A model generated the notes under the pieces. The model was not told the DNA's origin, searched no databases, and was given only the letters and a program-made list of their open reading frames with translations. From the IMG/VR virus record IMGVR_UViG_3300017786_003484, positions 1-64,000 of that record: 64,000 nt of DNA; one strand, given 5' to 3'. Shown here in pieces: positions 1 to 14,230 of the stretch (the stretch's first letter is position 1; every line of letters starts with the position of its first letter). Position numbers and translations under genes: made by a program.

Positions 1-231
1 ATTATCTCCAGCAATACGTTTTAATGCAGTAGATAGTTCCTCTCCTGGATTCTCTTCTGGCCAATTCAATCCAGCACCAGCTACTGCAGGAAGTACTTGA
101 CAACCTACTTTTAATCCTAACCACGAATCAGCAAAAGCCTTACATAGTTTTATTTTTAATTTATTAAGCCCTTCAATATCAATGTGATTGTCTAAGTTAA
201 CGTAAGGCTTTCCATTAATTTTGTATATCAT
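1..231 (-). CDS. Hypothetical protein, N-terminal part (runs off window)
   Basis: Hand-translated open frame MIYKINGKPYVNLDNHIDIEGLNKLK... starting at 231, overlapping the thyX stop; not in ORF track. Confidence 0.6.
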   Translation of the reverse strand, partial: MIYKINGKPYVNLDNHIDIEGLNKLKIKLCKAFADSWLGLKVGCQVLPAVAGAGLNWPEENPGEELSTALKRIAGDN

Positions 232-1084: not shown

Positions 1085-1992
1085 ACTGTTTCCTTTGCTT
1101 CTGAGTTTCTTTCTATTATAGCATGTTTTCTGTTTCCCCACAACCTTTTTATTTCCGAAAGTGGAGCAAACGGTAACATTATAATTAAGCAAGGATCAAA
1201 CTCGTGCCATCTACCACTTACACTTGCTCCAAAATCAAAGCTACTTGCTTCTCTATGATGGTTATTATGCCAACCACTTCCAAAATGAAAATATCCTATT
1301 GGCCAACAGTTTGTACTACAGTCTTTGTTATTAAAGTTTTGGTAGCCTGCGGCAGGAACATGTCCAAATGTATTAACCATTCCGTCCATGTGTAAACTAG
1401 ATAATGCTCCCATAATCCAAAACCAAAATGTAAATTGCCATCCAAATAATAACAAACTAACTAGTAATGTTCCGTATATAATTTTATTATAATGATTATG
1501 CAACCACACAATCTTTTTATCTCTTAATAGGTCAACGGCATAACGAAAACTTACACTATCCTGTTTAATATCAAACTGCCAACCCATATAACTATGCCAC
1601 CAGCCGTTTTCTACAGGAGTGTGAATGTCCTTGCCTGGCTGATCACTAACTTTATGATGATGTCCTCGATGTAATGATGCCCACCATAGAGGACTTCCTT
1701 CTCCTACCATAACTGCTAACCAGTATAAGAATGGTTTCATCCATTCACGTGGCTTCCAGGATTTATGACTTAATAGTCGATGTAGTGTTAAATTATTTCC
1801 AATACCATCTAATGTAATCCATCCACATAACATTGCAACTAAGTACCACCATTCCCAACCAGTGTAAATTAAATAAGGTATTAGTGTTACAGCAAGTAAA
1901 TGATATGGTAACCAAATTGCTACTATAAAAGGTATTTGTTTTGTTTTTTTGTATAGGCCTACCTGCCCTTGTATCCAAGTACTAATTGCCAT
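1081..1992 (-). CDS. Membrane fatty acid desaturase (delta-9/DesC-like)
   Basis: Three His boxes (HRLLSH, HRGHHH, GWHNNHH), DxHTP-GWWHSYMGW, VNTFGH, transmembrane stretches. Confidence 0.9.
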   Translation of the reverse strand: MAISTWIQGQVGLYKKTKQIPFIVAIWLPYHLLAVTLIPYLIYTGWEWWYLVAMLCGWITLDGIGNNLTLHRLLSHKSWKPREWMKPFLYWLAVMVGEGSPLWWASLHRGHHHKVSDQPGKDIHTPVENGWWHSYMGWQFDIKQDSVSFRYAVDLLRDKKIVWLHNHYNKIIYGTLLVSLLLFGWQFTFWFWIMGALSSLHMDGMVNTFGHVPAAGYQNFNNKDCSTNCWPIGYFHFGSGWHNNHHREASSFDFGASVSGRWHEFDPCLIIMLPFAPLSEIKRLWGNRKHAIIERNSEAKETV

Positions 1993-2635
1993 TTATTCTC
2001 CTATTATTTCTGATTGCTTTGCCACCTTCTGAGGGTGCTTCTGTATCAGTTCTTCGTAGTATATATCTTCTAAAGTTCATATTATGAGGATGTAGTGTTC
2101 TTCCTAGCAGTTCATTAACTAAACTATAGTGTGTTAATGTTTTTGCTGGAATTGTCATCTCAACAAAGGTATAATACTTTTCCCGTAAGAATAACATAAT
2201 ACGACTATACGGATCTTCTCTATCTTCCGGATAAGTTAAAAAGAATTCATTTAATCCAATAGCTTCGTGTATATTACAAAGCTCTGTAACTATTTCTCTA
2301 AACATTGGTACAAATTTAATTCCCATTGAAGGCGACAAAATCCAAGCAAAGCACCAACTAGGAGAATGAGGTAAACGTCTTACTCCTACAGCTGAAATTA
2401 GTTTATCATTTTTATATACTCCCCAACAGGCTCGCTGACTAAAGTTTTTAAACTTGTCAGGATCTAACATAAACATTCTAAAAAACTTTTCTCTTTCTTT
2501 AACCTGATCAATATCAAATCCTACTCTAAAATCTGGATACTTACTAGGATCCACTCCATCGTAGATACTATCAGCAAGTTCTAAAACTTGTTGTAGATTA
2601 GTATGGTTAAATTGTTTTAGTTTATATGCTGACAT
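1982..2635 (-). CDS. Hypothetical protein, possible GNAT-like acyltransferase
   Basis: Beta-strand pattern CWGVYKNDKLISAVGVRR resembles GNAT core; translationally coupled to neighbours. Confidence 0.45.
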   Translation of the reverse strand: MSAYKLKQFNHTNLQQVLELADSIYDGVDPSKYPDFRVGFDIDQVKEREKFFRMFMLDPDKFKNFSQRACWGVYKNDKLISAVGVRRLPHSPSWCFAWILSPSMGIKFVPMFREIVTELCNIHEAIGLNEFFLTYPEDREDPYSRIMLFLREKYYTFVEMTIPAKTLTHYSLVNELLGRTLHPHNMNFRRYILRRTDTEAPSEGGKAIRNNRRINGN

Positions 2636-3564
2636 ACTGTTTCAATCCCTTGCTCTAAATTATGCTTTAATAGGTCTGTTGGTATAGTATACTCTACAGG
2701 AGTATAACTGTCTAATGAAGGATGTCTATTTTCTTCTACATAGTCCCATAAGTGCATATAGTTTTCCATACCATGATACTTTGGTCTCATTCTAAATTTA
2801 AATCCTGCCTCAGAGTAAATTCTCATTTTACTACTAGTCCATCCGTATTTGTATTCAAAGTTATCGTTTATTAATAAACTTGCTGTTGGTATATTTAAAA
2901 AAGCAAGCATTGCTTCAGGTGTATATGTGTAGAAATTATTTAATGCTATTTGTCCTGTCTTATCTTGGAATCGTCTCCACACACCGTCTTGATCTTCCTT
3001 TTTTAAGAAAACCCAACCCCACGTTGTCTCACCTGTATTGTAATCTACAGTTGGCTTCTTTTCTAATTCTACTTCATCAACAGACATCATAGGCTCTTTA
3101 AAATCCTCAACAACCTTCATTAGTATTTGTTGATAAAAAGTATAAGATTGATATTTCTCTGCAATGTCTAAATACTCTCCACTTAAACAAAACTCTTCTG
3201 GATCAAACTCTATAATCTCAACTTTCTCATTAAATTCAGATTTCATCATTTCCATCATTGGTCCAATATCATACATGTTAGATTCATCTTTAAATTTAAT
3301 GGTTGCCAGTCTCGGTTTAACACCAGCCGCCTTAAAACTACGAAATGCAATTTCGCTATCTAGACCGCCACTCATAAAAAGTGTTAAGTCTGGATACTGA
3401 TCAATTATCATTTGGGCAATGCGACGCCATTCAATCTTTGCACTAAAAGTTGGTCTAGTACAACCACCAATAGACATACTAGTAATATCTGTTTCGCTAG
3501 TTCTCCATACAGATTCTTTATCTTCGTTATACCAATATCTTAAATGATTGTTTAACGTGTTCAT
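2617..3564 (-). CDS. PP-loop (adenine nucleotide alpha-hydrolase) protein, asparagine synthetase/QueC-like
   Basis: LTLFMSGGLDSE PP-loop motif. Confidence 0.65.
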   Translation of the reverse strand: MNTLNNHLRYWYNEDKESVWRTSETDITSMSIGGCTRPTFSAKIEWRRIAQMIIDQYPDLTLFMSGGLDSEIAFRSFKAAGVKPRLATIKFKDESNMYDIGPMMEMMKSEFNEKVEIIEFDPEEFCLSGEYLDIAEKYQSYTFYQQILMKVVEDFKEPMMSVDEVELEKKPTVDYNTGETTWGWVFLKKEDQDGVWRRFQDKTGQIALNNFYTYTPEAMLAFLNIPTASLLINDNFEYKYGWTSSKMRIYSEAGFKFRMRPKYHGMENYMHLWDYVEENRHPSLDSYTPVEYTIPTDLLKHNLEQGIETVCQHIN

Positions 3565-3774
3565 TTAAATAAATTCCAATACAAAAACATATGCTCCATA
3601 GGCATACAAAAGTGTTACTGGAATAATAGCAACCATGTTAGGGTCATGAAAAAATTTAATTACCTTTTTCATATTATTATTCTCCGTTTTTATCCACATA
3701 TTAAAGTTAAGCATTATATAAAAAACCATAACAATCGATGCTAAACCTAAACCTAATATTATGCCTGTACTCAT
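3565..3774 (-). CDS. Small two-TM membrane protein
   Basis: 69 aa with two hydrophobic segments; abuts neighbours. Confidence 0.6.
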   Translation of the reverse strand: MSTGIILGLGLASIVMVFYIMLNFNMWIKTENNNMKKVIKFFHDPNMVAIIPVTLLYAYGAYVFVLEFI

Positions 3775-3932
3775 TTATCGTCCTCAAAGTTTTCTCCGTT
3801 TACTACCCAGTCTAGTCCGTTAATGTCTGCGTCATGTTGTGCTACTCTATACTCTAGTGCTTTGATTCTAGTATATAATTCATCAATAAGTTCTGAGGAA
3901 ACATATGTATATCCATTTTTAACTGTAGTCAT
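3771..3932 (-). CDS. Small hypothetical protein (53 aa)
   Basis: Hand-translated MTTVKNGYTYVSSELIDELYTRIKALEYRVAQHDADINGLDWVVNGENFEDDK; fills the gap, ATGA overlap with next gene. Confidence 0.6.
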   Translation of the reverse strand: MTTVKNGYTYVSSELIDELYTRIKALEYRVAQHDADINGLDWVVNGENFEDDK

Positions 3933-4566
3933 TTTGTATCCTTTTCACATCATGTTTAAGTTGATCCATTGAAAAGCGAGTACAAGGTTTAATAACTGCC
4001 CATTGTGTAGTTGAATGAACTGTTATTGGATTCTCAATAGGAACACAATCAGTCCACCAGTTACTCCATATACCACTAACACTAGAAGGGGTTTTGCCTG
4101 TCGTATGTGCTTGAGAAATAACTTCCCATATTAATTTGTTATATTCATTAAAAGTTAGTATCATTCCATTTTTATTATTTGTCATTGCCCAGTTTAAGTT
4201 TGCTGTTAGTAAGTGTTTTGTTATATTATGATTTTCTCTGTATTCTTTATCCATCCATAAACGATTTCCGCCACTAGCATAATCAGGATGTAAGTTAGAA
4301 TGTTCTACTGCACTAACGCCTACTATTGAACCTTTTTCTAAATCATATAATAAATCAATTTGTCCTGTATCTCTTGTCCAACGTCTATGCTCATTTCTTT
4401 CTTCTTTAATAAGGTATAATAGTCCTGAAGGTTCAGAATTATCCATATTAGGTATTACATGTGATTTTTCGTAGTCTTTAGTCATTCTTTGTAGGAATGT
4501 ATTGTATGCAGATTCATGTTTTTTAAAACTCTCTGCATTTGTGGTTTTTATTTCTAAACTTTGCAT
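3919..4566 (-). CDS. GNAT-family acyltransferase-like protein
   Basis: IVGVSAVE...GGNRLWMDKEYRENH resembles GNAT motif A. Confidence 0.55.
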   Translation of the reverse strand: MQSLEIKTTNAESFKKHESAYNTFLQRMTKDYEKSHVIPNMDNSEPSGLLYLIKEERNEHRRWTRDTGQIDLLYDLEKGSIVGVSAVEHSNLHPDYASGGNRLWMDKEYRENHNITKHLLTANLNWAMTNNKNGMILTFNEYNKLIWEVISQAHTTGKTPSSVSGIWSNWWTDCVPIENPITVHSTTQWAVIKPCTRFSMDQLKHDVKRIQNDYS

Positions 4567-4581
4567 ACTAGTATGTATCTA

Positions 4582-5109
4582 TCAATCGATGTCGTTGCTG
4601 TCCAAGCTCATCAGTAGGTGCCAACGTTTTTCGTTTCCACAATTTATTGCAGTATGTAACTCTCTTGTGTCGACTTTGAACACTCCACCATTGGCAGGTA
4701 TCTCTACTAATTCAGGAGGATCAACAAATAAAAACCGAGCTTGTTTGTTTGTATATGTTGCTATATGTAATCTTTGATGAGGATCTCTATGCATACTATA
4801 ACAGCTACGAGGCTCCATAATCATTATTCTTGTGCGATATACTTTCCATGGAAATTCGTCAAAGAACTTTTCCCAATATGTTCCAATTAAGTCTGGACGT
4901 AATTTATCCCATTGATGCTCGTTGTCGCCTAAATATGTTCCTGTACCTTCAGCATGATCTCCTATGCCGCCTGATTGTAATGCTGTTTGAGATCTAAAGT
5001 CTCCTAGTTCGTTATCCCATGCTAATTTTTTACATTCCTCATGCAACTGTTCTACATCGTTGATAACATAAGGCTTGTCGTTATGTCGCATACGGTACTT
5101 CTTACTCAT
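4582..5109 (-). CDS. Cupin/2OG-Fe(II) oxygenase, aspartyl/asparaginyl beta-hydroxylase-like
   Basis: RTRIMIMEPRSCYSMHRD...RLHI...VDTRELHTAINCG..RWHL: HxD...H triad in a double-stranded beta-helix pattern. Confidence 0.7.
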   Translation of the reverse strand: MSKKYRMRHNDKPYVINDVEQLHEECKKLAWDNELGDFRSQTALQSGGIGDHAEGTGTYLGDNEHQWDKLRPDLIGTYWEKFFDEFPWKVYRTRIMIMEPRSCYSMHRDPHQRLHIATYTNKQARFLFVDPPELVEIPANGGVFKVDTRELHTAINCGNEKRWHLLMSLDSNDID

Positions 5110-6374
5110 TATACCTCTCCTATAACCATAAACCTATTGCATTTTTCTAAGTTTAATTCACCTTGATAATGTATCTTCGATACTCCACATTCTTCAACAA
5201 ACTCGTCTAAATGAGAAAAGCAATTAACATGATCTGGAACATCAAACATATTGTTACCTTGTAATACAACTCTAGTTCCTTTAGGAAGAGACTCGACCCA
5301 ACCTCCGTGGTCATGAAAGTGTTCTGTTATTGTATCAACTATAACAAAATTTTCCATTTTGGTAAAGTCCATGGATCTAATATCTTCATTTGATACTCGG
5401 TAACGTTCAGTTGATACTCCTGCCATTGACATCTCGTTACCATCAACATCTGTTATGTCTGGTGCTGGTACATTTAATATACAAGATGGATCGTTAACAG
5501 TCTTGTCAATATCTACATTAACAACTTTTCCAAACTCTTGTTTACGACAGTTTGCTAAGAAAGGCAATATTCCGAGCCAACCTCCAACTATAATTGTAGT
5601 AGTATCTTCTGTAATCCAGTTTACTTCTTTTAATTTGTCTAGTAACCAAACTTTACTTTTAATTTGATTTCTACTTAATGCATCGTGCCAGTTTAACTTT
5701 GGACTATATGCTATTGCTTTAGACATACGTTTGAGTTCTGATTGTAATTCAGGAAAATAATTTATACTTGCATTATTTGCAAGTACTTCAATATTATCGT
5801 CAACTAAATTTTCTAACATAGTTGTTCTTCCTACTAACAGTCTTGCAAAGTAACATACCTCATAGATGTTTCCTTGTTTTGCTTCTGCTAGTTTATTAGC
5901 ACCCCAGGCTATGTTTTCTAATGCATCAGTTCCGTTTTCTTTTATCCAACCTGCTGTAGCCCATACAGGTTGAGCAATATCTTCTACTACTTGGCAACCT
6001 TTCCAAATTGTATTAATTACTTCATTGGGTGCAGATGTAAACTTGATATTATTATCTTCTCTATGATACATTCCAAGTGCTAGTGCTAGTCTTAACTGAT
6101 TCCATCTTGTTTTTTCTTTAGCAGGTTCTACACATGCTACTAAATCCTGAAAGTTTAAGAAGTTTTCGATTCCAACATTATAAAACAAATGTTCTAAGTC
6201 ATCGTCTGATCCTGTTTCTAAGTTTCTTCTAAGCCAATGTAAGCTACTACGAAACCCAATAAACTCCTCCATAAAATACAAAAAAGCTATTCTATTTTTT
6301 CTAATAGTATCTTCTTTACTTCCTGGTACTAGTCTAGTATTATTCTTTTGTTTTGCTTCTTGTAGTCTTACCAT
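5109..6374 (-). CDS. Class I SAM-dependent methyltransferase with N-terminal extension
   Basis: IIVGGWLG motif I, VNVDID motif II, DTITEH, LQGNN. Start at 6374 (TAATG overlap). Confidence 0.7.
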   Translation of the reverse strand: MVRLQEAKQKNNTRLVPGSKEDTIRKNRIAFLYFMEEFIGFRSSLHWLRRNLETGSDDDLEHLFYNVGIENFLNFQDLVACVEPAKEKTRWNQLRLALALGMYHREDNNIKFTSAPNEVINTIWKGCQVVEDIAQPVWATAGWIKENGTDALENIAWGANKLAEAKQGNIYEVCYFARLLVGRTTMLENLVDDNIEVLANNASINYFPELQSELKRMSKAIAYSPKLNWHDALSRNQIKSKVWLLDKLKEVNWITEDTTTIIVGGWLGILPFLANCRKQEFGKVVNVDIDKTVNDPSCILNVPAPDITDVDGNEMSMAGVSTERYRVSNEDIRSMDFTKMENFVIVDTITEHFHDHGGWVESLPKGTRVVLQGNNMFDVPDHVNCFSHLDEFVEECGVSKIHYQGELNLEKCNRFMVIGEV

Positions 6375-7369
6375 TACTGCCACCATCCAAACAACTTTAA
6401 GTTAGTTCTCCAATGTACATCATCATATGTTAAAGGTTTTTCAGGATGTAACTGTAACTGTTTAAAGAGTAAACTAGCACTTTCGTCTAATATTGGCAAG
6501 TTAAATCCGTAAACCTCATTTACTGCATCTTGGAGTTCCTTCATGCCTCTTTCTGTTATTGTTTCAAAACTCTTGAAGTATTCATTAAACCATTCGTAAT
6601 CCCTGATCAATGTGTAGTCAAAATTATTAAAATATAACTGTCTAATAGCAGTACGAGCACCTATAATACTCCATATACCATTTTTAACATCAGCACCAAC
6701 TGTTAGCCATGTTAGCAATCGTTGATAGTTTGCGGCATGCATTATTTCTTTAATATTGTCTTTATTAATTACTTTTCCAGCTTCGGTTGAAAGTTTAACT
6801 CCTTCTCTAAAGCCTACACGAAAAGCCTGATAAGGAGATGCATTTGTATAAACAGTTGAATAACAACCGGGTAGTTCCTTGTACTGTGATTCGTCCCAAC
6901 AAAAATCAACTTCATCTCGTTCAGTATTTGATGCTTCGTGACTTTTCATTGACATTAGATGTTCTGTATTCCATAGTTTTAATCCGCCATTACCATACAT
7001 TAATCCATTTGTAAACTGTCTACCGCCCCAAGTGTAAGACATAAATCCTATACCTTTAGGAAGACGTAATTCAAAGAAAGCAGGATCTACTATACTATCC
7101 GCATCAACTGTGATTACATATCCAGCATTAGGAAAAACCTGAGCCGCGGCTTTATGACAAGCATCAAATCCTTTAACACCATGTACACGTTGTACTTCTT
7201 GATGTGGTGTTGTTAGTTGTAATGTTTTCCAGTTAGCGTCAGCATTTGGCTCATCAAAACTTAGAAATACAATAGGAATATCTCTGGTAGTTCTAGCAGT
7301 ATGCTTTACATTTCCTGCAAGTATCTTTGCTTTATCGTCTTTTGATAGTTTAAACATTGACATTGTCAA
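6374..7369 (-). CDS. Glycosyltransferase-like protein (GT-A), paralog 3
   Basis: VFLSFDEPNADANW, HGVKGFDACHKAAA, VDAD (DxD), NGLMYGNGGLKLW, AFRVGFREGVKL. Confidence 0.65.
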   Translation of the reverse strand: MTMSMFKLSKDDKAKILAGNVKHTARTTRDIPIVFLSFDEPNADANWKTLQLTTPHQEVQRVHGVKGFDACHKAAAQVFPNAGYVITVDADSIVDPAFFELRLPKGIGFMSYTWGGRQFTNGLMYGNGGLKLWNTEHLMSMKSHEASNTERDEVDFCWDESQYKELPGCYSTVYTNASPYQAFRVGFREGVKLSTEAGKVINKDNIKEIMHAANYQRLLTWLTVGADVKNGIWSIIGARTAIRQLYFNNFDYTLIRDYEWFNEYFKSFETITERGMKELQDAVNEVYGFNLPILDESASLLFKQLQLHPEKPLTYDDVHWRTNLKLFGWWQ

Positions 7370-8216
7370 ATTCCTTTTCTAACCATTCCCAGTTATTAAT
7401 TAGATTCATTTTCTCACTATTAGCATATTTTAAACCATGCTTAACTCCAGCTTTTGCTCCTTTAATAACCCACTCTGCATTTAATCCTTCTGATACTGTT
7501 GACCATACATGATATCTCACAGATGCTTCGAACACTTCATCAAAGTAATTATGTGTTAGCAAACTTTCTCTATACTTTTCAATTATAATACTTCTTTTGC
7601 CGCCTCTGTATGATGACTTAGATTTGCTATCCCAATCTTGTTTTTGTATATGTTCTTCCAACCTAACAAATTCTTTTTCTCTTTGTTGTTCTCTTCTTTT
7701 AATTGCACCAAAAACTGAACCTAATGATGCTAGTTTTGCACACTCTCTAAATGCGCCTATAAACGCACTATCTGGTGTTGCGTTAAATCTTGTTTCACAA
7801 CTAACTTTAGACTTAGCAATAGTAGATGCTCCTATTGTTGTAGACAAATCAATTTCCCAACTGCGACCTTCTAAAAATGGCTTTTTAGGAAACAACTTAA
7901 CTCCGCCATATCCATATTCTAATCCATTGACTGGATTAACACTATTCCATACAATTACACACTCGTCTTCTGGATGATCCCAATGTAGTTCGTTTGGATC
8001 TGGAACAAAATTAAAATCAAAGTCATCTACAATCCAAGCATCAGCATCAACTACATAGAAGTTGTCTGTTGCTGACTGTTCTGCACAAGTTTTATGTACT
8101 TCATAGATTCCTTTAACATCTCTTACTTCTTTGATGTTTGGAACAAATTTTGTTAGTCTCTGGTAGTTTTCTTCTGCGTTCCATTCGCCTTGGGAAATAA
8201 AAAATACATCTAACAT
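7350..8216 (-). CDS. Glycosyltransferase-like protein (GT-A), paralog 2
   Basis: DVFFIS..E.NAEENY, VVDAD, NPVNGLEYGYGGVKLFP, GAFRECAKL. Confidence 0.65.
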   Translation of the reverse strand: MLDVFFISQGEWNAEENYQRLTKFVPNIKEVRDVKGIYEVHKTCAEQSATDNFYVVDADAWIVDDFDFNFVPDPNELHWDHPEDECVIVWNSVNPVNGLEYGYGGVKLFPKKPFLEGRSWEIDLSTTIGASTIAKSKVSCETRFNATPDSAFIGAFRECAKLASLGSVFGAIKRREQQREKEFVRLEEHIQKQDWDSKSKSSYRGGKRSIIIEKYRESLLTHNYFDEVFEASVRYHVWSTVSEGLNAEWVIKGAKAGVKHGLKYANSEKMNLINNWEWLEKEFDNVNV

Positions 8217-8220
8217 CTAA

Positions 8221-9195
8221 TCAACCTACTATTAACTGATCAACATCAGCTTCTCTAACTAATGGTGCTAGTCTGATAGGATTAAAGTAACTGGCTTTAT
8301 AAAACTTACTTGCTTCTTCATTTAGTGTAGATATTTCTAAACCCATATCTTGCTTTAATATTCTTCCTAGCTTTTCTACTTCATTGTATAATTTTTTTGT
8401 ATTCCAAGAGAAGTCGCTTATTACACAATGCTCATCTGTTCCGTAAAACTTTGGAGCAACTTCTTCATGCCAATATTTATTATGCCATTCAAAGTCTCGT
8501 ACTAGTGTAAAATCAAATTCATTTCTTTTTAGATTTGTCATATAGCAACCTAAACGAGCACCATATATTGCCCACATACCATTCTCTACATCAGAGCCAA
8601 CACTCATCCATATTAAAAGTCTTCTATGATTTTTATAATTATTTTTCTCTGCTACTTGTCGCCAATCCATAGGCTCACCGTTATGTAATGCTAACTTAAC
8701 ACCTTCTCTAAACCCTGCTCTATATGCTTGGTAAGGAGTTCTATTATTATAAACATCACTATAGATATTGTTTAACTGATGATAATGTATATCCCAGCAA
8801 AAGTCAACAGCACCTGCTCCGCTGTCTACTTCTTCATGTGTTCTCATCTGTTCTACTACTTTTACAGGCCACAACTTAATTCCACCATTGCCATATACTA
8901 ATCCATTGATTACATTTTTACCGGACCAACTTAATACGTCAGCTTCGTGAAACTTTTCTATATCTAGTTCAAGTTCAAAGAAATCTTCTCTTACTTTATT
9001 ATCTGCATCAATACCAATGAAGCGTTCTGTTTCAGATAGTTTAGCGGCGGCTTTATGGCAAGCATCAGATCCAAATACTCCGTGACTTCTTTTAGCCCAA
9101 GGACAAATTGATTGTAAATGAGCCCAATTCTCGTCTGCATTTGGTTCATCGTAACTGATAAACACAACATCATATTCGCTTATAGGCACACTCAT
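8221..9195 (-). CDS. Glycosyltransferase-like protein (GT-A), paralog 1
   Basis: DVVFISYDEPNADENW, IDAD, NGLVYGNGGIKLWP, AYRAGFREGVKL. Confidence 0.65.
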   Translation of the reverse strand: MSVPISEYDVVFISYDEPNADENWAHLQSICPWAKRSHGVFGSDACHKAAAKLSETERFIGIDADNKVREDFFELELDIEKFHEADVLSWSGKNVINGLVYGNGGIKLWPVKVVEQMRTHEEVDSGAGAVDFCWDIHYHQLNNIYSDVYNNRTPYQAYRAGFREGVKLALHNGEPMDWRQVAEKNNYKNHRRLLIWMSVGSDVENGMWAIYGARLGCYMTNLKRNEFDFTLVRDFEWHNKYWHEEVAPKFYGTDEHCVISDFSWNTKKLYNEVEKLGRILKQDMGLEISTLNEEASKFYKASYFNPIRLAPLVREADVDQLIVG

Positions 9196-10148
9196 GTTTC
9201 TACTCCAATATCTAGATTGTTTGCTTTATATAATAGGTTTACAGCTGAGTTGTCTTGCCAATCAGCAATTTCAAAAGGAGCATTTTGCCTTAGCATTAAT
9301 GCTGGAAGTTCTACCCAGTTAACAAAATTATCTGGGTCATCACCTTTAACGAGAGCACCTTTTATATTTCCTGATATATCATCAATAGGACTACCCGGCG
9401 TATAATGACTTTGTGCCCATAGCACATTATCTTTTACATATAGTGTAATATGTGTTCCAGGTCCTGGATGCGAGATTATTGTCTGCATCTCTGATGTTCC
9501 GTTAAATGTATAGTATTTTTCTGCTCTTACAAATGTTACTCCTTTAGATACCTTTGAAAAGTTTAAACGTATGTTCTTGTCCTTGTGTATTATATCATCA
9601 ATAACTAATGGATTAATTATATCCCATAAAGAAAATTCTACATATCCTTTCTCTAGCAAAGGTTGTAACTTAACATTAATGTTTCCTAATAATATATGAG
9701 GATCTGTGCTATCTGTTATATAGATTTTAAGTGGAGCCGTTTCTTTATTTTCTACTGCACGAGTTGTCCAAATCCTATTAGGTTCTAATCGTACAATACC
9801 TTTCTTAGGAAATAATACAAATTTTAATTCTGGGTCTTTACTTTCTTCGTATAATGAAGTACTATGCCATTCACTATAACTGCTAACTGTATATTCAGAT
9901 ATAGATCGTTTGTCTACTAGATCTAATGCTCCAATTTTTTCATTTATTGTAACAATATAATTATTTTGACTTTCTGTTCCAGACAGTATATTTTGAATTT
10001 TAGAATAAGATACACTTAAGGCACTAGGATTATTGTCTTGTGTTCCTGGAGATATTTTAGTAATACTACCTTTATCATTATACTCAACTGACCAAAATTC
10101 TTGTTTAGCTCGTTTTCTTTTTCTAACTGCAAATTTAATATCAGCCAT
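9192..10148 (-). CDS. Hypothetical protein
   Basis: ~318-aa ORF coupled within the operon; internal similarity between YITDSTDPHILL and LVKGDDPDNFV segments. Confidence 0.6.
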   Translation of the reverse strand: MADIKFAVRKRKRAKQEFWSVEYNDKGSITKISPGTQDNNPSALSVSYSKIQNILSGTESQNNYIVTINEKIGALDLVDKRSISEYTVSSYSEWHSTSLYEESKDPELKFVLFPKKGIVRLEPNRIWTTRAVENKETAPLKIYITDSTDPHILLGNINVKLQPLLEKGYVEFSLWDIINPLVIDDIIHKDKNIRLNFSKVSKGVTFVRAEKYYTFNGTSEMQTIISHPGPGTHITLYVKDNVLWAQSHYTPGSPIDDISGNIKGALVKGDDPDNFVNWVELPALMLRQNAPFEIADWQDNSAVNLLYKANNLDIGVET

Positions 10149-10842
10149 TATACACATACTCTAATGTTTTTTTAGAATTATCTAGCCATACTGGAAATAA
10201 TTGTACATGATTTTCTAGTTTAAAATTTCCATTTGACGGATAATATGAAATCCAATCATGCCATGTGTTTGTTGCGTACATCACTGGATCAGTTTCTAAA
10301 TCTCTAATACTTAAATCAACTAAAGGAAAAGTATCAAGAGAAGTCCAAGAAGGAAGTAAAGAAACCATTGCACTTAACCAATGCTGGAGGTCTGACTTTT
10401 CTGGTAGGTAATTTGTCCACAACTGTTCTTCTTTAAAGTTTGCTATTAACATTAAAGATTCAACTGCACTCATTGAATCCCCTATTAACATAATATAAGG
10501 AATACTTGTTTGATTATTTTCTTCTTGTACTTTTCTTTTTAAAAGTTTCTTGTTTGGGATTTCAAGTAACCTATGATCTACAAGTTTTCCTGGAACAATA
10601 TTTTCTTTATTTTCCTTAGCAATTTCTAATAGTTTAAATGATAGTGGCCTAGGAGCAAGTCCAGCCTGGCATAACATATCTCCATCTTCTAGTGGAATTC
10701 TAGACAGTTCTAATAATTGTTTTTTTGGATTATCTTCTAATAACTCTATATAAATTGTTTCAACATCATTATTAATTGTAAGTACATCTTCTTTAGTTAC
10801 ATTATAAAGATCTATGTCTTTTCCAAATACATAACACCTCAT
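10141..10842 (-). CDS. Hypothetical protein, possibly a degenerate glycosyltransferase-like paralog
   Basis: Coupled ORF between GT-like genes; no intact DxD seen. Confidence 0.45.
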   Translation of the reverse strand: MRCYVFGKDIDLYNVTKEDVLTINNDVETIYIELLEDNPKKQLLELSRIPLEDGDMLCQAGLAPRPLSFKLLEIAKENKENIVPGKLVDHRLLEIPNKKLLKRKVQEENNQTSIPYIMLIGDSMSAVESLMLIANFKEEQLWTNYLPEKSDLQHWLSAMVSLLPSWTSLDTFPLVDLSIRDLETDPVMYATNTWHDWISYYPSNGNFKLENHVQLFPVWLDNSKKTLEYVYNG

Positions 10843-11717
10843 GCCATACACCTCATAATACTTCTATAGTTACGAAGTATACTTAACTTGTTCATCATAT
10901 GTACATCTTCTCCTGTAATTCTTACTGCAATATTTTTATATTCGTCTGGCATATTACTTAACATAATCCAATCATTTGCATCTTTAACTTCTACAATATC
11001 ATCACGTTGATCTTGATAACGCATATGTAAAGGTATGCGTCCAATAAATCCTCCGTCTTGCATTCCGTCACATAAATGACAAGCTACAGAAGCGGCATAA
11101 TCAGTACGATATAAACTACCAGGAAATTTATATAAGAACCTATAATATTCCCAATGGTCCTTTACATGAGCCCAAACATTAAAAAAGTGTTCTGCCTCTT
11201 CTGATTTTCTCCAGTAAACTACAGTTGACCACCACATGCGTATTCCTGCATAGTGTAACCATCTTTCAGTAGTATAGGGTTCTTCGCAACGTAAATTCAT
11301 TGCGTCTCGATGCATTGCAACACTACTTTGTCCTCCAAATAATTTTTCTAAGTTATTACTACCAACTAGATAATCAGTATCAATTAGTATAGTCTCATCA
11401 AATGGAGTTAAATTATATATGTCGTGTTTGTTTGTGTTGGTAAATTGTGCATTAAAACTTTTGTAAGCACCGTCGTTGTGTATTCTAATATTAGTTTCGT
11501 ATTCAGGATCAGTCATTATGACTTCGTCCCAGAGTGTTTTTACTAGATTACTTTGAGATTTTTTCTTATTAAAATCTTTGAGACTTCTTTCATTGGTTAC
11601 AAGGACAACAGGTATCTCTGGCATATATTTTTTTAAAGCCGAACTTGCAACAGTCGCTAATCTCATATAGTCTATTTGCTCATTGTTATAAGCAAACATC
11701 ATAAAGCCTTTTGTCAT
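10839..11717 (-). CDS. Nucleotide-diphospho-sugar transferase (GT8-like)
   Basis: KGFMMFAYNN..IDY, TPFDETILIDTD (DxD), WSTVVYW, YRTDYAAS. Confidence 0.7.
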   Translation of the reverse strand: MTKGFMMFAYNNEQIDYMRLATVASSALKKYMPEIPVVLVTNERSLKDFNKKKSQSNLVKTLWDEVIMTDPEYETNIRIHNDGAYKSFNAQFTNTNKHDIYNLTPFDETILIDTDYLVGSNNLEKLFGGQSSVAMHRDAMNLRCEEPYTTERWLHYAGIRMWWSTVVYWRKSEEAEHFFNVWAHVKDHWEYYRFLYKFPGSLYRTDYAASVACHLCDGMQDGGFIGRIPLHMRYQDQRDDIVEVKDANDWIMLSNMPDEYKNIAVRITGEDVHMMNKLSILRNYRSIMRCMA

Positions 11718-12067
11718 TTTGCTCCTACAACTGTTTTTGTAGCCCTAGCTTTTTTTAACTTTTGTTGTTCTTTATATTTTAACTCTAATGCTTTATTATA
11801 TGTTTGTAAAAGACTTTTTAAAAAGTCTTTGCTTTTTTCAACTGCACTAGTATTGCCTATAGAATCCTCTATGTATAATACTTGTTTTGGATTTACAGTT
11901 ACTTGTGCAGATACATAACCAATTAGTTCTTGTGTTACTTTAAAAATATGATTATTATAGTTTAGTAATAACATTGATTCAACCCGAGCATCAATGTTTT
12001 TTCTTTGTGTTTGCAACGTTAATCTATAATTTGCAAACGCAAGTGCCTTTTGTAGTCTATCGTCCAT
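11714..12067 (-). CDS. Hypothetical phage protein
   Basis: 117-aa ORF, first gene after a late-promoter motif. Confidence 0.7.
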   Translation of the reverse strand: MDDRLQKALAFANYRLTLQTQRKNIDARVESMLLLNYNNHIFKVTQELIGYVSAQVTVNPKQVLYIEDSIGNTSAVEKSKDFLKSLLQTYNKALELKYKEQQKLKKARATKTVVGAK

Positions 12068-12095
12068 ATTAATATCCTAGAGTTATATATGCACT

Positions 12096-12105
12096 TATTT
12101 ATTTA
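12096..12105 (-). promoter_or_regulatory. Late promoter-like TAAATA (tandem)
   Basis: Minus-strand TAAATAAATA upstream of 12067; resembles the T4 late promoter TATAAATA. Confidence 0.55.
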
Positions 12106-12128
12106 GGGATTGTAAGGCAGGTAAACCG

Positions 12129-13118
12129 TTAAGTTTGTGTCCACGGAGATGGATTTGATACTACAGGTTGTGGAATATCTAATGTTACATTTTCTTCTGT
12201 AACACTACTTGGATGAACCATACTTGCTGTTATTGAAAGATCTCCGCTTGTGGTTATTGATGTAGAAGTTCCATCTAATACAATTCTTAAATTTAGATAC
12301 TTATTACTATCTCCGTACACTCTTCCATATACCTTAACTCGTATATTAGCATAACCACCATAGCCGCCATAACCACCATAGCCACCATAGCCACCACCGC
12401 CACCTGCTGGACTAGTATAAAGTAATTTTTCTGTTGTATTCAGTTCACTAAATCCAAGGTCTTGTGTAACTCCAACACTATTTAGACTTTGTGTTGTTTC
12501 GACATTAAGTTTAATGGTTCCCATAGCTATAAATAGATCTCTCCAAGCAGTATATCCTGTACCAGTTCCATTAGCATATGCTAATTCTAATCGTAAGTCT
12601 CCTCCGGCATTAAAGAAGTGTCTAGCACTCTCATAGTATTCTGGATCAGTGCCAAACAAATAATCTAATTGTATTTCAAATTGATTAGTCCAACTTGTAG
12701 AGGAACTGTAAGTGTTTAATGTTGATAATTGTGTAAGATTTGGATCCACGTCATTGCGTTTAATTCTTGCTAATTCTAGTAAATCATGAGCAGTATTAAA
12801 AAAATCTGCTGTAATTTTTCCGCCTCTAGAAGTTACAACTAGCTCGTCATCTGAAGCATCTGTCCTGTATGTGCTAATATTAATTCTATTAACAAGTTCG
12901 TTAGCATAAGAAGATGTAACCTTATCTCCTCTTGCTACAGTCGGTACTTCTGTTCCACCCCAACCCCAACGAATATCATCTTGAACTGCGGCGTCATCTG
13001 TTTCTGATGGACCTTCATTTGCATGTGTATCTGCAAATAGTTCATTTACTTGATCTGAAAGATTATTAAAATAATCTTTCGTAATTTTATCGCCACGGCT
13101 ATTTGGGTGCCCAGACAT
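12129..13118 (-). CDS. Virion structural/tail protein with (GGY)n loop
   Basis: Three RGxK(I/V)T repeats at N-terminus, ARHFFNAGG motif, GGGGGYGGYGGYGGYGGY. Confidence 0.6.
   Translation of the reverse strand: MSGHPNSRGDKITKDYFNNLSDQVNELFADTHANEGPSETDDAAVQDDIRWGWGGTEVPTVARGDKVTSSYANELVNRINISTYRTDASDDELVVTSRGGKITADFFNTAHDLLELARIKRNDVDPNLTQLSTLNTYSSSTSWTNQFEIQLDYLFGTDPEYYESARHFFNAGGDLRLELAYANGTGTGYTAWRDLFIAMGTIKLNVETTQSLNSVGVTQDLGFSELNTTEKLLYTSPAGGGGGYGGYGGYGGYGGYANIRVKVYGRVYGDSNKYLNLRIVLDGTSTSITTSGDLSITASMVHPSSVTEENVTLDIPQPVVSNPSPWTQT
12351..12404 (-). repeat. 9-bp tandem repeat encoding GGY
   Basis: (GGNGGNTAT) x5 on minus strand, synonymous variation between units. Confidence 0.85.
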
Positions 13119-14230
13119 TATCTGACTCCTACTGTTGCCTCAATTAATCCAATACCTTCGCCATCATAATCTTGTAAACTACGGCCAATGATACTAAAAA
13201 GAGGATCGTTTTCTGTTGCTTTTCTTGCAACTCCTGGTGTTTCACTTGCTACTAATCTATCTCCTTTTCCAATTGGTCCTGAGACTTTAGTAGGAATACG
13301 TCCTGCTACTGCAATTGGCATTGCATGTTTCTCTCTTTTCTTTCTTGCGTTTAACAAGTAAGCTGGTCTAGTTGATACCACACCAAAGATACTTGGATCT
13401 CCGTCAAACATAGTGCTAGTTACTTCGTTAACACCGCCTAGTGCAACCAATGTGCCTGGCTCGTATGTTGCATCACCTACATAAATTTCTGCAACGTCAG
13501 CAAATTCTGCTTCAACTGCTACACCACGAATTTTAAAATCACTACTTGAATTTAAATTTAATCCTTTTCCAATTATACCAGTTTGGTTATAATCTCCAGA
13601 TCCTAAATTGGCATCTACGCCACCTGCGTCTGCTCCGCAAAATGATTGTAAATTTTCACTTGCATGTGGTACATAATCTGCATCACTACTTAAAATAGCA
13701 ACAAGTATTCCGTTGACTTTAAGTTTAATTGCAGGATGTATGTTTAAGTTAGGTGTTGCATCAACATAATTTGTATCTTTAATTGTTTCATTTATAACAA
13801 CGCCTGTTTCTAATCCTGGAACTCCAAAAACATTGTTTAACTGAATAAACGCAGTTCCGTCCCACATAAACACACCTTGGTTTGCTGTATCAAACCACAT
13901 ATCTCCTTTAGCTCGTTTAACTAAAGAGGGTTGAGTACCAACAAACAAGTGCCCTACTGGCTTCCAAACTCCACCGCCTTGGTAAATGTTTATTTGTTTT
14001 GGTTCTCCAACTACATCGGTATTTCTATACCAAATTTGACCAACGATAGGGTTGGCTGGTTCGTCGTTACTATTGAAATTTTCTAATAGTTTGACAAAGT
14101 TTTCAGCAATTAATTCTCCATATCCTAAATAGTTTTTTCCTAAAAGATTTAATCCATACGTTGTATCGATTTCACCTTCTTGGATATTTAGGAGAATTGT
14201 GCCATCTGTTTTGTTTACTTCATATGCCAT
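13118..14230 (-). CDS. Tail fibre/spike with C-terminal autocleaving chaperone (peptidase G2-like)
   Basis: N-terminal GKNYLGYGELIAENFVKLLENF..P.NP..GQIW; C-terminal ADVAEIY..YEPGT..GVVST..AGRIP..GDRLV. Confidence 0.7.
   Translation of the reverse strand: MAYEVNKTDGTILLNIQEGEIDTTYGLNLLGKNYLGYGELIAENFVKLLENFNSNDEPANPIVGQIWYRNTDVVGEPKQINIYQGGGVWKPVGHLFVGTQPSLVKRAKGDMWFDTANQGVFMWDGTAFIQLNNVFGVPGLETGVVINETIKDTNYVDATPNLNIHPAIKLKVNGILVAILSSDADYVPHASENLQSFCGADAGGVDANLGSGDYNQTGIIGKGLNLNSSSDFKIRGVAVEAEFADVAEIYVGDATYEPGTLVALGGVNEVTSTMFDGDPSIFGVVSTRPAYLLNARKKREKHAMPIAVAGRIPTKVSGPIGKGDRLVASETPGVARKATENDPLFSIIGRSLQDYDGEGIGLIEATVGVR

What the first reader, a model, noticed from the sequence alone, without database searches (positions are those of the whole stretch)
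5109..12105. Late-expressed glycosyltransferase/methyltransferase cluster next to tail genes: candidate virion glycosylation system
Seen: directly downstream of tail/baseplate genes, and behind its own late-type TAAATA motif (12096-12105), lie eight coupled genes: a 117-aa protein, a GT8-like protein, two unknowns, three tandem paralogous GT-A-like proteins (shared FIS.DE.NA..N, H, DAD, NGL.YG.GG.KL, FRE..KL motifs) and a SAM methyltransferase. Inference: late timing, location and the very Ser/Thr-rich fibres point to building and methyl-capping a glycan on virion proteins rather than DNA modification. No nucleotide hydroxymethylase is seen in the window.
Basis: partly seen in the sequence, partly recalled or inferred. 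Interest (0 to 1): 0.7.

Follow-up and report, generated by a model that had tools for sequence, protein, structure and literature searches.

The report
Tail-fibre-linked glycan-building operon of a jumbo phage
Right after the tail-fibre genes, an uncultured jumbo phage carries a tightly packed, probably late-expressed operon of unannotated sugar-transferring and sugar-decorating enzymes; it is conserved in hundreds of related phages, and what it decorates (most likely virion fibres) has not been shown.

Summary
Eight overlapping minus-strand genes lie at 5109-12067, behind a CTAAATA-type motif that also precedes the structural genes.

- The 292-aa protein has a glycogenin/GT8-like fold (Z 16.4).
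- The three paralogs have a GT-A N-terminal domain (Z about 10) with an invariant DAD motif.
- The 425-aa protein ends in a class-I SAM-dependent transferase-like domain. This call is weak, and methyl transfer is not shown.

New findings:
- One 'unknown' (236 aa) is a degenerate GT8-like paralog.
- The operon continues downstream with a close Cpz10-type 2-oxoglutarate hydroxylase homolog and a PP-loop-like protein.
- In 80 IMG/VR loci, where the contig reaches far enough, the order fibre genes, 117-aa gene, GT8-like gene, its paralog, fast-evolving gene, GT-A gene is kept. It is followed by a hypervariable tailoring region holding extra GT-A genes or up to seven radical SAM genes.
- GT-A homologs also occur in bacterial genomes beside other glycosyltransferases, not beside DNA enzymes.

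No ThyA homolog, TET/JBP or C5 DNA methylase was found in the 244 kb held. Virion-protein glycosylation is the best reading (about 0.4) but is unproven. DNA, host envelope glycans and a small molecule remain possible acceptors.

The parts
12096..12106 (-). Late-promoter-like motif CCCTAAATAAATA, 34-38 nt upstream of the first gene's ATG
   Evidence: Sequence read. CTAAATA/TAAATA is enriched 17-fold/8-fold in upstream gaps of the genome and is present before structural genes. A gp55-like sigma factor is encoded at 33330-34298. Function as a promoter is inferred.
11714..12067 (-). f1: 117-aa basic protein (net charge +9), unknown function, first gene of the conserved core
   Evidence: Present at the same position in nearly all loci that reach far enough (HMM hits in 68 ORFs of the 80 IMG/VR loci) and in RsoM2USA. 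Only a weak PHROG match of unknown function.
10839..11717 (-). GT8-like (glycogenin-fold) GT-A glycosyltransferase, 292 aa
   Evidence: AF2 model pLDDT 92.8. Foldseek top hit glycogenin-1, E 2.7e-7. VIA Z 16.4 over 219 residues, and all 50 listed matches are GT8-like enzymes. D113, D115 and H214 are invariant in 45 homologs. No Pfam hit.
10141..10851 (-). Degenerate paralog of the GT8-like protein, 236 aa; DxD replaced by A-P-R in this lineage
   Evidence: hhalign of A8 against A4: probability 93%, E 2.7e-7. The alignment shows DAD kept in RsoM2USA but lost here. In some loci this position is called GT8 by the HMM.
9192..10157 (-). f11: fast-evolving 321-aa protein of unknown fold, no enzyme motif; candidate specificity factor or acceptor
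   Evidence: 18-20% identity between lineages. Only 13 representatives at E<=0.001 among 1.84 billion proteins. Atlas feature neighbours are phage structural-type clusters, but at chance-level scores.
8221..9195 (-). F0 paralog 1: 324 aa, N-terminal GT-A domain (residues 1-150) plus a family-specific helical C-terminal domain
   Evidence: AF2 pLDDT 88.5. Foldseek TarS/TarP E 1.7e-4. VIA Z 10.3 over 142 residues. D63-A-D65 invariant. More than 7,700 metagenomic homologs with no Pfam domain.
7350..8216 (-). F0 paralog 2: 288 aa, the most diverged copy
   Evidence: 37% identity to paralog 1 over residues 8-169, E 1.1e-16. VDADA motif kept.
6374..7369 (-). F0 paralog 3: 331 aa
   Evidence: 47% identity to paralog 1, E 2.7e-66. 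VDADS motif kept.
5109..6386 (-). 425-aa protein: helical N-terminal half plus a C-terminal class-I SAM-dependent-transferase-like domain (about residues 230-425)
   Evidence: The ESM Atlas model of this protein (pTM 0.55) matches class I methyltransferase clusters, TM by the hit 0.69-0.90. GGWxG ... NVDID motifs align to PH0226 (E 1.1) and to thermospermine synthase (E 0.09). No Pfam hit. The short form is present in RsoM2USA and in Bdellovibrionales.
4582..5109 (-). Cpz10-like Fe(II)/2-oxoglutarate beta-hydroxylase, 175 aa, start overlaps the stop of the previous gene
   Evidence: Profile against PDB: 7V4F (Cpz10) E 1.8e-39 over residues 7-166. H107-x-D109, H152 and R162 invariant. Pfam Asp_Arg_Hydrox matches all four aligned members, the best at E 7.7e-5 and the window's own copy below Pfam's cut-off.
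3919..4566 (-). 215-aa conserved protein of unknown function (F12)
   Evidence: Syntenic in the window's sub-lineage. No Pfam or PDB match.
2617..3564 (-). 315-aa protein with an SGGLDSE PP-loop motif (ATP pyrophosphatase-like)
   Evidence: Invariant S65-G-G-L-D-S-E. Weak matches at that motif to NAD synthetase (E 0.026) and a tRNA thiolase.
1982..2635 (-). 217-aa conserved protein of unknown function (F13)
   Evidence: Syntenic. No informative match.
12129..14230 (-). Upstream neighbours: 329-aa Gly-Tyr-repeat, Ser/Thr-rich protein (f6) and 370-aa tail-fibre-like protein (FIB); candidate acceptors
   Evidence: PHROG tail-fibre and virion-protein matches for the 370-aa protein. Sequences. Placed directly before the core in nearly all loci that reach far enough.

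Best explanation
This is a late-transcribed glycan-assembly operon fixed at the end of the tail-fibre module of a distantly T4-like jumbo phage.

The conserved core has five genes: the 117-aa protein, a GT8-like (by analogy retaining) GT-A transferase, its degenerate paralog, a fast-evolving 321-aa protein, and a GT-A enzyme of a large unannotated family. I infer that this core starts and extends an oligosaccharide from host nucleotide sugars.

Lineage-specific enzymes downstream then decorate it. Here these are two further GT-A paralogs, a SAM-dependent transferase-like protein, a Cpz10-type hydroxylase and a PP-loop-like protein. In sister lineages they are one to seven twitch-type radical SAM enzymes.

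The most likely acceptor is a virion protein made at the same time, namely the adjacent fibre proteins. The result would be phage particles with a variable glycan coat.

Shown: gene order, paralogy, folds, catalytic motifs, conservation and the promoter motif.
Inferred: enzyme activity, timing and, above all, the acceptor.
For: Folds and motifs: the GT8-like protein matches glycogenin at Z 16.4 with invariant DxD and His. The F0 family has a GT-A domain at Z 10.3 with invariant DAD.

Position: in 80 IMG/VR loci (43-100% identity) the order giant protein, f4, fibre (1-3 copies), f6, f1, GT8-like, paralog, f11, GT-A is kept wherever the contig reaches far enough (a few loci have an inserted ORF, or a member the HMMs miss), while the downstream region is shuffled. 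The same core sits after experimentally confirmed virion proteins (ORF356, 359, 361) in Ralstonia phage RsoM2USA, together with a GDP-mannose 4,6-dehydratase (PMC8504454).

Timing: a CTAAATA-type motif is shared with structural genes, a gp55-like sigma factor is present, there is no terminator-like site in the gap before the cluster, and there is no internal copy of the motif on the coding strand.

Not DNA-linked: no ThyA homolog, TET/JBP or C5 DNA methylase in 244 kb. The ThyX has the canonical RHRxxS motif. The SAM-dependent-transferase-like domain lacks the PC/ENV or (D/N)PPY DNA-methylase motifs (consensus).

Cellular homologs of the GT-A family lie beside GT-B glycosyltransferases and a secreted caspase-Sel1-peptidoglycan-binding protein, not beside DNA enzymes.

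All the enzymes are predicted to be soluble.

Precedent from the literature: mycobacteriophage virion glycosylation (Freeman et al. 2023, as cited in PMC12619734).
Precedent from my own recall, not checked here: the PBCV-1 A064R protein combining two glycosyltransferase domains and a methyltransferase domain.
Against: - No direct evidence of any glycan on any protein.
- Linkage to fibre genes may simply be inherited synteny within one phage lineage.
- Phage DNA-glycan clusters use the same folds and are also found near structural genes (10.1101/2023.12.21.572611).
- The record is only about 74% complete, so a base-hydroxylating enzyme could lie in the missing quarter. RsoM2USA has a second, divergent ThyA homolog.
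- The Cpz10-like, PP-loop-like and twitch radical SAM partners resemble small-molecule and nucleoside-sugar chemistry.
- The GT-A, SAM-dependent-transferase-like and radical SAM trio also occurs in Bdellovibrionales genomes without fibre genes.
Confidence: 0.42

Rival explanations
1. DNA sugar hypermodification. The GT-A and GT8-like enzymes would build mono- to oligosaccharides on a hydroxylated pyrimidine in phage DNA before packaging, as an anti-restriction coat. The variable tailoring enzymes would diversify the glycan.
For: Published phage BGCs combine a methyltransferase, a dioxygenase, a TarP/JGT-like GT-A and GT8-like secondary transferases, and many lie near structural genes (10.1101/2023.12.21.572611). 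The F0 top PDB hits are TarS/TarP. This cluster also holds a methyltransferase-like protein and a 2OG dioxygenase. RsoM2USA has two ThyA homologs, one of them divergent. Hypervariability fits an arms race with restriction systems.
Against: No ThyA homolog, TET/JBP or C5 DNA methylase in 244 kb. The dioxygenase is a close Cpz10/Asp-Arg-hydroxylase relative, not a TET/JBP. The SAM-dependent-transferase-like domain lacks DNA-methylase motifs. F0 has DAD, not the DDD motif described for the DNA GT-A enzymes. Cellular F0 homologs sit with envelope-type glycosyltransferases. Late-type promoter.
Confidence: 0.17
2. Modification of a host envelope glycan (LPS, capsule or a teichoic-acid-like polymer) during infection, as prophage TarP or Gtr systems do. 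The purpose could be to block superinfection or to prevent released particles from re-adsorbing to cell debris.
For: The best solved structural neighbours of F0 are the wall-teichoic-acid transferases TarS, TarP and RmlT. LgtC and WbbM are among the GT8-like neighbours. Cellular F0 homologs lie with GT-B transferases and envelope proteins.
Against: No membrane segment, flippase or polyprenol-linked step is encoded in the cluster. The phage is lytic, the promoter is late-type and the cluster sits inside the structural operon. The tight, conserved coupling to fibre genes is not explained.
Confidence: 0.15
3. Biosynthesis of a free glycosylated small molecule (nucleoside-, amino-acid- or lipid-linked) that acts on the host or on competitors. 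The GT enzymes would act as tailoring enzymes.
For: The coupled 175-aa gene is a close homolog of Cpz10 from the caprazamycin liponucleoside pathway (E 1.8e-39; PMC9814697). The partners are a SAM-dependent (possibly aminopropyl/acp-type) transferase-like protein, a PP-loop-like ATPase and a desaturase-like membrane protein. In sister loci there are ACP, TauD and fatty-acid hydroxylase genes. The nearest solved relatives of the twitch radical SAM proteins act on sugars and nucleotides: MoaA, BlsE and BtrN.
Against: No scaffold-forming enzyme (NRPS, PKS or a nucleoside-aldehyde pathway) was found. The Cpz10-like gene is missing from most lineages that keep the GT core. No exporter is present. 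The position and promoter point to virion assembly.
Confidence: 0.12
4. The proteins have GT-A folds but are not active transferases. They would be sugar-nucleotide- or glycan-binding structural or assembly factors of the fibre apparatus.
For: One member (236 aa) has clearly lost its DxD motif. No Pfam GT model recognises any of them. The genes are embedded in a structural operon.
Against: DxD and further acidic or His residues are invariant across 44-45 homologs of the other four proteins. In RsoM2USA none of the homologs was among the ten abundant virion bands.
Confidence: 0.06

Closest known systems
Mycobacteriophage virion glycosylation (Che8, Corndog, Myrna; Freeman et al. 2023, cited in PMC12619734)
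   Same: Phage-encoded GT-A glycosyltransferases (with methyltransferases, by my recall) encoded beside structural genes, and glycans placed on virion proteins. The Che8 transferase appears among the generic GT-A structural matches of F0.
   Different: No sequence relationship: tblastn against 50,697 phage records finds only RsoM2USA. The host type, phage morphology and gene set differ. Here there is a five-gene core with a hypervariable tailoring region, and no glycan has been observed.
Chlorovirus PBCV-1 A064R (two GT domains plus a methyltransferase domain that build and methylate the capsid glycan; from my own knowledge) and the PBCV-1 capsid-glycosylating transferase solved as PDB 2P72
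   Same: A virus-encoded series of GT-A transferases plus a methyltransferase acting on a virion protein. PDB 2P72 is among the Foldseek matches of F0.
   Different: A eukaryotic virus with fused domains. Similarity is at the fold level only (E about 2e-3, 128 aligned columns).
Phage DNA glycan-hypermodification clusters (C5 methyltransferase + 5mYOX/TET or ThyA homolog + TarP/JGT-like GT-A + GT8-like GT; bioRxiv 10.1101/2023.12.21.572611; NAR 2026, PMC13326640)
   Same: The same two transferase folds, several successive GTs, neighbourhoods that include structural genes, and very large metagenomic diversity.
   Different: No entry enzyme (ThyA homolog, TET/JBP, C5 methylase) was found. The dioxygenase here is Cpz10-like. 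F0 has DAD instead of DDD.
Glycogenin / CAZy GT8 (also LgtC, GlyE, LARGE1 xylosyltransferase domain, UGGT catalytic domain)
   Same: The whole 292-aa model superposes on glycogenin (Z 16.4, 219 residues, 16-18% identity). DxD and a downstream His are invariant.
   Different: Not recognised by Pfam Glyco_transf_8 (no hit at E<=0.1). Donor, acceptor and stereochemistry are unknown.
Cpz10, the Fe(II)/2OG beta-hydroxylase of caprazamycin biosynthesis (PDB 7V4F; PMC9814697)
   Same: Same length and collinear full-length match (E 1.8e-39). The HxD...H...R iron and 2OG ligands are conserved.
   Different: A phage context with none of the other caprazamycin pathway genes. The substrate here is unknown.
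Bacterial flagellin/pilin glycosylation islands and O-antigen loci (general knowledge, not tested here)
   Same: A conserved transferase core next to the gene for a surface filament, followed by a hypervariable set of sugar-tailoring enzymes.
   Different: An analogy of organisation only. No homology was shown, and no nonulosonic-acid or nucleotide-sugar genes were found in this genome.

Membership tests
CAZy GT8 / Pfam PF01501 Glyco_transf_8 (292-aa protein) | Recognised by the family's sequence model | tested here: not met
   No Pfam, NCBIfam or PHROG family at E<=0.1. A profile of 45 homologs finds no PDB sequence.
CAZy GT8 / Pfam PF01501 Glyco_transf_8 (292-aa protein) | GT-A fold with glycogenin/LgtC-type topology over the whole catalytic domain | tested here: met
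   AF2 pLDDT 92.8. VIA Z 16.4, 219 residues aligned, rmsd 3.5. All 50 listed matches are GT8-like enzymes.
CAZy GT8 / Pfam PF01501 Glyco_transf_8 (292-aa protein) | DxD motif plus a downstream His that bind Mn2+ and the nucleotide sugar | tested here: inconclusive
   D113, D115 and H214 are invariant in 45 sequences, and their spacing resembles that of glycogenin. No residue-level superposition was available.
CAZy GT8 / Pfam PF01501 Glyco_transf_8 (292-aa protein) | Retaining glycosyl transfer from a UDP-sugar | not testable with these tools
   Needs an enzyme assay.
GT-A fold inverting transferases of GT2 type (F0 paralogs 324/288/331 aa) | Recognised by Pfam PF00535 Glycos_transf_2 or a related model | tested here: not met
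   No hit. A PF00535 search of the genome finds only a weak site elsewhere, at 61065-61196. None of the listed homologs carries a Pfam domain.
GT-A fold inverting transferases of GT2 type (F0 paralogs 324/288/331 aa) | Nucleotide-diphospho-sugar transferase (GT-A) Rossmann-like domain | tested here: met
   Residues 1-150: VIA Z 10.3 (B4GALNT1) and 8-9.6 for many GT2/GT-A enzymes. Foldseek TarS/TarP E 1.7e-4, probability about 1. Nucleotidyltransferases of the same superfamily also score Z about 8, so the subclass is not fixed.
GT-A fold inverting transferases of GT2 type (F0 paralogs 324/288/331 aa) | DxD motif at the end of the central strand | tested here: met
   D63-A-D65 is invariant in 44 sequences, including all three window paralogs.
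Class I SAM-dependent methyltransferase (425-aa protein, C-terminal half) | Recognised by a methyltransferase sequence model | tested here: not met
   No Pfam or NCBIfam hit for the window protein. Among 24 diverse members, one hits MTS at E 0.015 and one hits Spermine_synth at E 0.079.
Class I SAM-dependent methyltransferase (425-aa protein, C-terminal half) | Rossmann-like class I fold with a Gly-rich motif I and an acidic residue at the end of strand 2 | tested here: inconclusive
   The ESM Atlas model (pTM 0.55) matches methyltransferase clusters, TM by the hit 0.69-0.90. GGWxG and NVDID align to the motifs of PH0226 (E 1.1) and thermospermine synthase (E 0.09).
Class I SAM-dependent methyltransferase (425-aa protein, C-terminal half) | Transfers a methyl group (rather than aminopropyl or acp) | not testable with these tools
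   The weak best hits are aminopropyltransferases. The co-folding job with SAM was not run by the tool and is no evidence either way.
Phage DNA sugar-hypermodification BGC (Pyle et al.) | A base-hydroxylating entry enzyme nearby (ThyA homolog or 5mYOX/TET), with or without a C5 cytosine methyltransferase | tested here: not met
   PF00303, PF12851 and PF00145 give no match in 244 kb. Caveat: the record is about 74% complete.
Phage DNA sugar-hypermodification BGC (Pyle et al.) | GT-A enzyme with the R...DDD...EDY/F active-site motifs and JGT/TarP-like fold | tested here: inconclusive
   TarP/TarS are the top PDB hits, but the motif is DAD, and no JGT match appeared among the named AFDB hits.
Virion-protein glycosylation system (mycobacteriophage type) | Glycan covalently attached to capsid, tail or fibre proteins | not testable with these tools
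   Needs glycoproteomics. RsoM2USA is the cultured phage in which to test it.
Virion-protein glycosylation system (mycobacteriophage type) | Transferase genes embedded in or adjacent to the late structural module | tested here: met
   Placed directly after the fibre genes in the 80 loci wherever the contig reaches far enough, and in RsoM2USA. The promoter motif is shared with structural genes.
Cpz10 / Pfam PF05118 Asp_Arg_Hydrox (175-aa protein) | Full-length homology and the HxD...H iron triad plus the 2OG-binding Arg | tested here: met
   Profile E 1.8e-39 to 7V4F over residues 7-166. H107, D109, H152 and R162 are invariant. PF05118 matches all four aligned members, the best at E 7.7e-5; the window's own copy scores 16.6 bits against a cut-off of 22.6.

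The most novel reading that the evidence does not exclude
Aquatic and soil jumbo phages of this lineage would carry a 'virion glycosylation island'. Its invariant five-gene transferase core is welded to the tail-fibre genes and is headed by a very large, unannotated GT-A family (more than 7,700 clusters at 90% identity). It is followed by a hypervariable set of sugar-tailoring enzymes: extra transferases, a SAM-dependent aminoalkyl- or methyl-transferase coupled to a Cpz10-type hydroxylase, or arrays of up to seven twitch radical SAM enzymes. Each lineage would thus display a different, chemically elaborate glycan on its fibres, as a phage counterpart of bacterial flagellin-glycosylation and O-antigen islands. 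This would be the first such system in myoviruses of Gram-negative hosts.
Probability: 0.35. Interest if true: 0.78.

Novelty: new variant of a known kind. Interest (0 to 1): 0.6.

Why it matters
If the acceptor is the virion, glycan coats on phage fibres would be widespread in environmental jumbo phages. That bears on host recognition, on evasion of host or predator recognition, and on phage engineering.

Whatever the acceptor, the work defines several things:
- a very large transferase family that no sequence library names;
- a GT8-like family and its pseudo-enzyme paralog;
- a hypervariable tailoring region rich in radical SAM enzymes, which is a source of new sugar chemistry.

It also names a cultured, tractable phage (Ralstonia phage RsoM2USA, ORF347-354) in which the question can be settled at the bench.

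Tried and rejected
- Pfam, PHROGs and NCBIfam scans of all eight proteins gave nothing usable.
- Sequence profiles of the F0, GT8-like, F12 and F13 families against PDB gave nothing.
- megablast of the region against phage records found no match.
- A T4-type TATAAATA late promoter is rejected: 2 sites against 9.4 expected.
- Sigma-70-like promoter and intrinsic-terminator scans were at chance level.
- The 321-aa protein is not related to the GT8-like family (hhalign probability 1.6%). An exhaustive HMMER search found only 13 relatives, so no fold or function could be assigned.
- The co-folding job for the 425-aa protein with SAM was not folded by the tool and is not used as evidence.
- 'ThyX as a hidden hydroxymethylase' is rejected as unsupported, because the canonical RHRxxS...SxRY motif is present.
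- The 'moraphage' paper (PMC12619734) reports four core glycosyltransferase orthogroups in aquatic jumbo phages, but I could not show that it describes this lineage.
- No phage-encoded nucleotide-sugar genes were found (PF01370, PF00483).
It was rebuilt without that row.

Full report
What the window is. The window is the first 64 kb of a 244-kb IMG/VR virus record estimated to be 74% complete. PHROG matches show a distantly T4-like myovirus: gp6-like baseplate wedge, gp5-like hub, portal, major head protein, SbcCD-like nuclease and a gp55-like late sigma factor. The only cultured relative that carries the cluster is the 344-kb Ralstonia jumbo phage RsoM2USA.

Checking the observation. The eight minus-strand ORFs are at the stated coordinates and are joined by 4-20-nt overlaps or a 4-nt gap. 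The three tandem genes are true paralogs: 47% identity with E 2.7e-66, and 37% identity with E 1.1e-16. They carry the quoted motifs.

The gap before the first gene reads CCCTAAATAAATAAG. The exact T4 late box TATAAATA is under-represented. A de novo k-mer count over the upstream gaps of the whole record shows TAAATA enriched 8-fold and CTAAATA 17-fold. The motif stands before the fibre-like, baseplate and other structural genes. CTAAATA is depleted in the window as a whole (11 against 23.5 expected). Even so, four coding-strand copies fall in the short gaps before late genes, one of them before this cluster, and none lies inside the cluster on that strand. No terminator-like site lies in the gap that separates the cluster from the fibre genes. 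Late transcription is therefore a reasonable inference, not a measurement.

What the proteins are. No Pfam, PHROG or NCBIfam model recognises any of the eight.

- The 292-aa protein. With an alignment of 45 homologs it folds at pLDDT 92.8. It superposes on glycogenin-1 at Z 16.4 over 219 residues, and every one of the 50 listed matches is a GT8-type enzyme: glycogenin, LgtC, GlyE, LARGE1, UGGT and the Skp1 galactosyltransferase. D113, D115 and H214 are invariant.
- The 324-aa paralog. It folds at pLDDT 88.5. Residues 1-150 form a GT-A domain: Z 10.3 to B4GALNT1, and Foldseek E 1.7e-4 to TarS/TarP. D63-A-D65 is invariant. Residues 150-324 form a helical domain found only in relatives of this family. 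The family is very large, with more than 7,700 clusters at 90% identity and none carrying a Pfam domain. It is almost entirely viral.
- The 236-aa 'unknown'. It is a distant paralog of the GT8-like protein (hhalign probability 93%, E 2.7e-7). It has lost the DxD motif in this lineage but keeps DAD in RsoM2USA.
- The 321-aa protein. It evolves very fast (18-20% identity between lineages). It has only 13 detectable relatives among 1.84 billion representatives and shows no enzyme motif.
- The 425-aa protein. The Atlas model of its C-terminal half matches class I methyltransferase clusters, and its GGWxG...NVDID motifs align with methyltransferase motifs I and II. A profile of 24 diverse members finds thermospermine synthase best, and only weakly (E 0.09). 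I therefore call it a class-I SAM-dependent-transferase-like protein and leave the transferred group open.

The cluster is larger than reported. The next gene (4582-5109) overlaps the 425-aa gene by one base. It is a full-length homolog of Cpz10, the Fe(II)/2OG beta-hydroxylase of caprazamycin biosynthesis (E 1.8e-39), and keeps the HxD...H...R residues (PMC9814697). It is followed by:
- a 215-aa unknown protein;
- a 69-aa protein with two membrane segments;
- a 315-aa protein with an invariant SGGLDSE PP-loop motif;
- a 217-aa unknown protein;
- a desaturase-family membrane protein and a canonical ThyX.

Comparative anatomy. Six fetched loci and 80 IMG/VR loci at 43-100% identity show one core order wherever the contig reaches far enough: giant virion protein, f4, one to three fibre-like genes, f6, f1, GT8-like gene, its paralog, f11, GT-A gene. 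A few loci carry an inserted ORF or a core member that the HMMs miss.

What follows the core is hypervariable. In the window's sub-lineage it is two more GT-A genes, the SAM-dependent-transferase-like gene, the hydroxylase and the rest. Elsewhere it is one to seven tandem radical SAM genes, all belonging to NCBIfam NF033640 (N-terminal twitch domain). Their nearest solved relatives act on nucleotides and sugars: MoaA, BlsE and BtrN.

RsoM2USA keeps the core (ORF354-350), a radical SAM gene, a short GT-A gene and the short form of the SAM-dependent-transferase-like protein. This block lies directly after ORF356, 359 and 361, which were identified in purified virions, and near a GDP-mannose 4,6-dehydratase (PMC8504454).

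Cellular homologs. A scan of one genome per prokaryotic species found GT-A family members at 34-45% identity in two groups.
- Rhodobacterales and Roseibium, at host-like G+C. There they lie beside a GT28-like and a GT4-like transferase and a secreted caspase-Sel1-peptidoglycan-binding protein.
- Bdellovibrionales. There they lie with the same SAM-dependent-transferase-like and radical SAM partners.
In neither group are they next to DNA-metabolism genes.

Which acceptor? This is the open point.

For virion proteins:
- the conserved physical link to the fibre genes;
- the shared late-type promoter;
- soluble enzymes;
- a hypervariable tailoring region, as expected for an exposed glycan;
- the envelope-type context of the cellular homologs;
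- the absence of ThyA homologs, TET/JBP and C5 DNA methylases from the 244 kb held.

Against virion proteins:
- phage DNA-glycan clusters use just these folds and often lie near structural genes;
- a quarter of the genome is missing;
- RsoM2USA has a second, divergent ThyA homolog;
- the Cpz10-like, PP-loop-like and radical SAM partners have small-molecule relatives.

I put virion-protein glycosylation at about 0.42, DNA at about 0.17, host envelope glycans at about 0.15, a free metabolite at about 0.12 and non-catalytic roles at about 0.06.

Comparison with known systems, and novelty. By organisation the nearest precedents are mycobacteriophage virion glycosylation and the chlorovirus A064R system. 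By fold the nearest are the DNA-glycan clusters of Pyle et al. There is no sequence-level membership in any of them.

The 292-aa protein works like a GT8 enzyme but fails the family's sequence model. The paralogs are GT-A enzymes outside every curated family. I found no paper describing this cluster. The RsoM2USA homologs are annotated as hypothetical proteins. I rate it a new variant of a known kind, with interest 0.6.

Noticed in passing
window 4582-5109 (-): A 175-aa gene overlaps the stop of the 425-aa gene by 1 nt. It is a close homolog of Cpz10, the 2OG/Fe beta-hydroxylase of the caprazamycin nucleoside-antibiotic pathway (PDB 7V4F, E 1.8e-39).
   Followed up: yes
window 2617-3564 (-): A 315-aa protein has an invariant SGGLDSE PP-loop motif, with weak matches to NAD synthetase and a tRNA thiolase. 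It may be an ATP-dependent amidoligase or adenylating enzyme belonging to the same operon.
   Followed up: partly
window 215-1992 (-): A fatty-acid-desaturase-family membrane protein (1081-1992) and a canonical ThyX end the co-directional gene array. The ThyX carries the RHRTAS...SARY motif, and its likely start is the ATG at about 1084 rather than the listed TTG at 1192.
   Followed up: partly
L048, L049, L043, L041 and other IMG/VR loci, downstream of the GT-A gene: Arrays of four to seven tandem radical SAM genes of NCBIfam NF033640 (N-terminal twitch domain, function unknown) replace the extra GT-A and SAM-dependent-transferase-like genes in sister lineages.
   Followed up: partly
L109-L143 (Rhodobacterales, Roseibium); L119, L124, L132, L140 (Bdellovibrionales): Cellular homologs of the phage GT-A family occur in two settings. 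In alphaproteobacteria they lie beside GT28-like and GT4-like transferases and a secreted caspase-Sel1-PG-binding protein. In Bdellovibrionales they lie with the same SAM-dependent-transferase-like and radical SAM partners as in the phages.
   Followed up: partly
window 12129-13118 (-): The 329-aa protein just upstream of the cluster has a GGGGGYGGYGGYGGYGGY repeat and a Ser/Thr-rich tail (S+T 19.8%). It has no database match.
   Followed up: no
whole record; window example at about 33280 (+), before the gp55-like gene: A second upstream motif, GGTTGACC(T), is about 29-fold enriched in intergenic gaps. It is probably the early or middle promoter of this phage.
   Followed up: no
window 60858-61505 (+): A weak Glycos_transf_2 match (E 7.9e-4, 16.6 bits, below the cut-off) lies in a 215-aa ORF far from the cluster. 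It may be another GT-A protein.
   Followed up: no
L001 (RsoM2USA 225112-226089); L012, L013: RsoM2USA has a GDP-mannose 4,6-dehydratase among the structural genes just upstream of its copy of the cluster. It also has two ThyA-family genes, one of them divergent (85 bits).
   Followed up: partly
L007 17564-20933: A sister locus carries TauD, an acyl-carrier protein, an Asp/Arg hydroxylase and a fatty-acid hydroxylase a few kilobases past the GT core. This hints at acyl or lipid chemistry in the variable region.
   Followed up: no
window 3565-3774 (-): A 69-aa ORF with two predicted membrane segments lies inside the array, after the only sizeable gap (144 nt).
   Followed up: no
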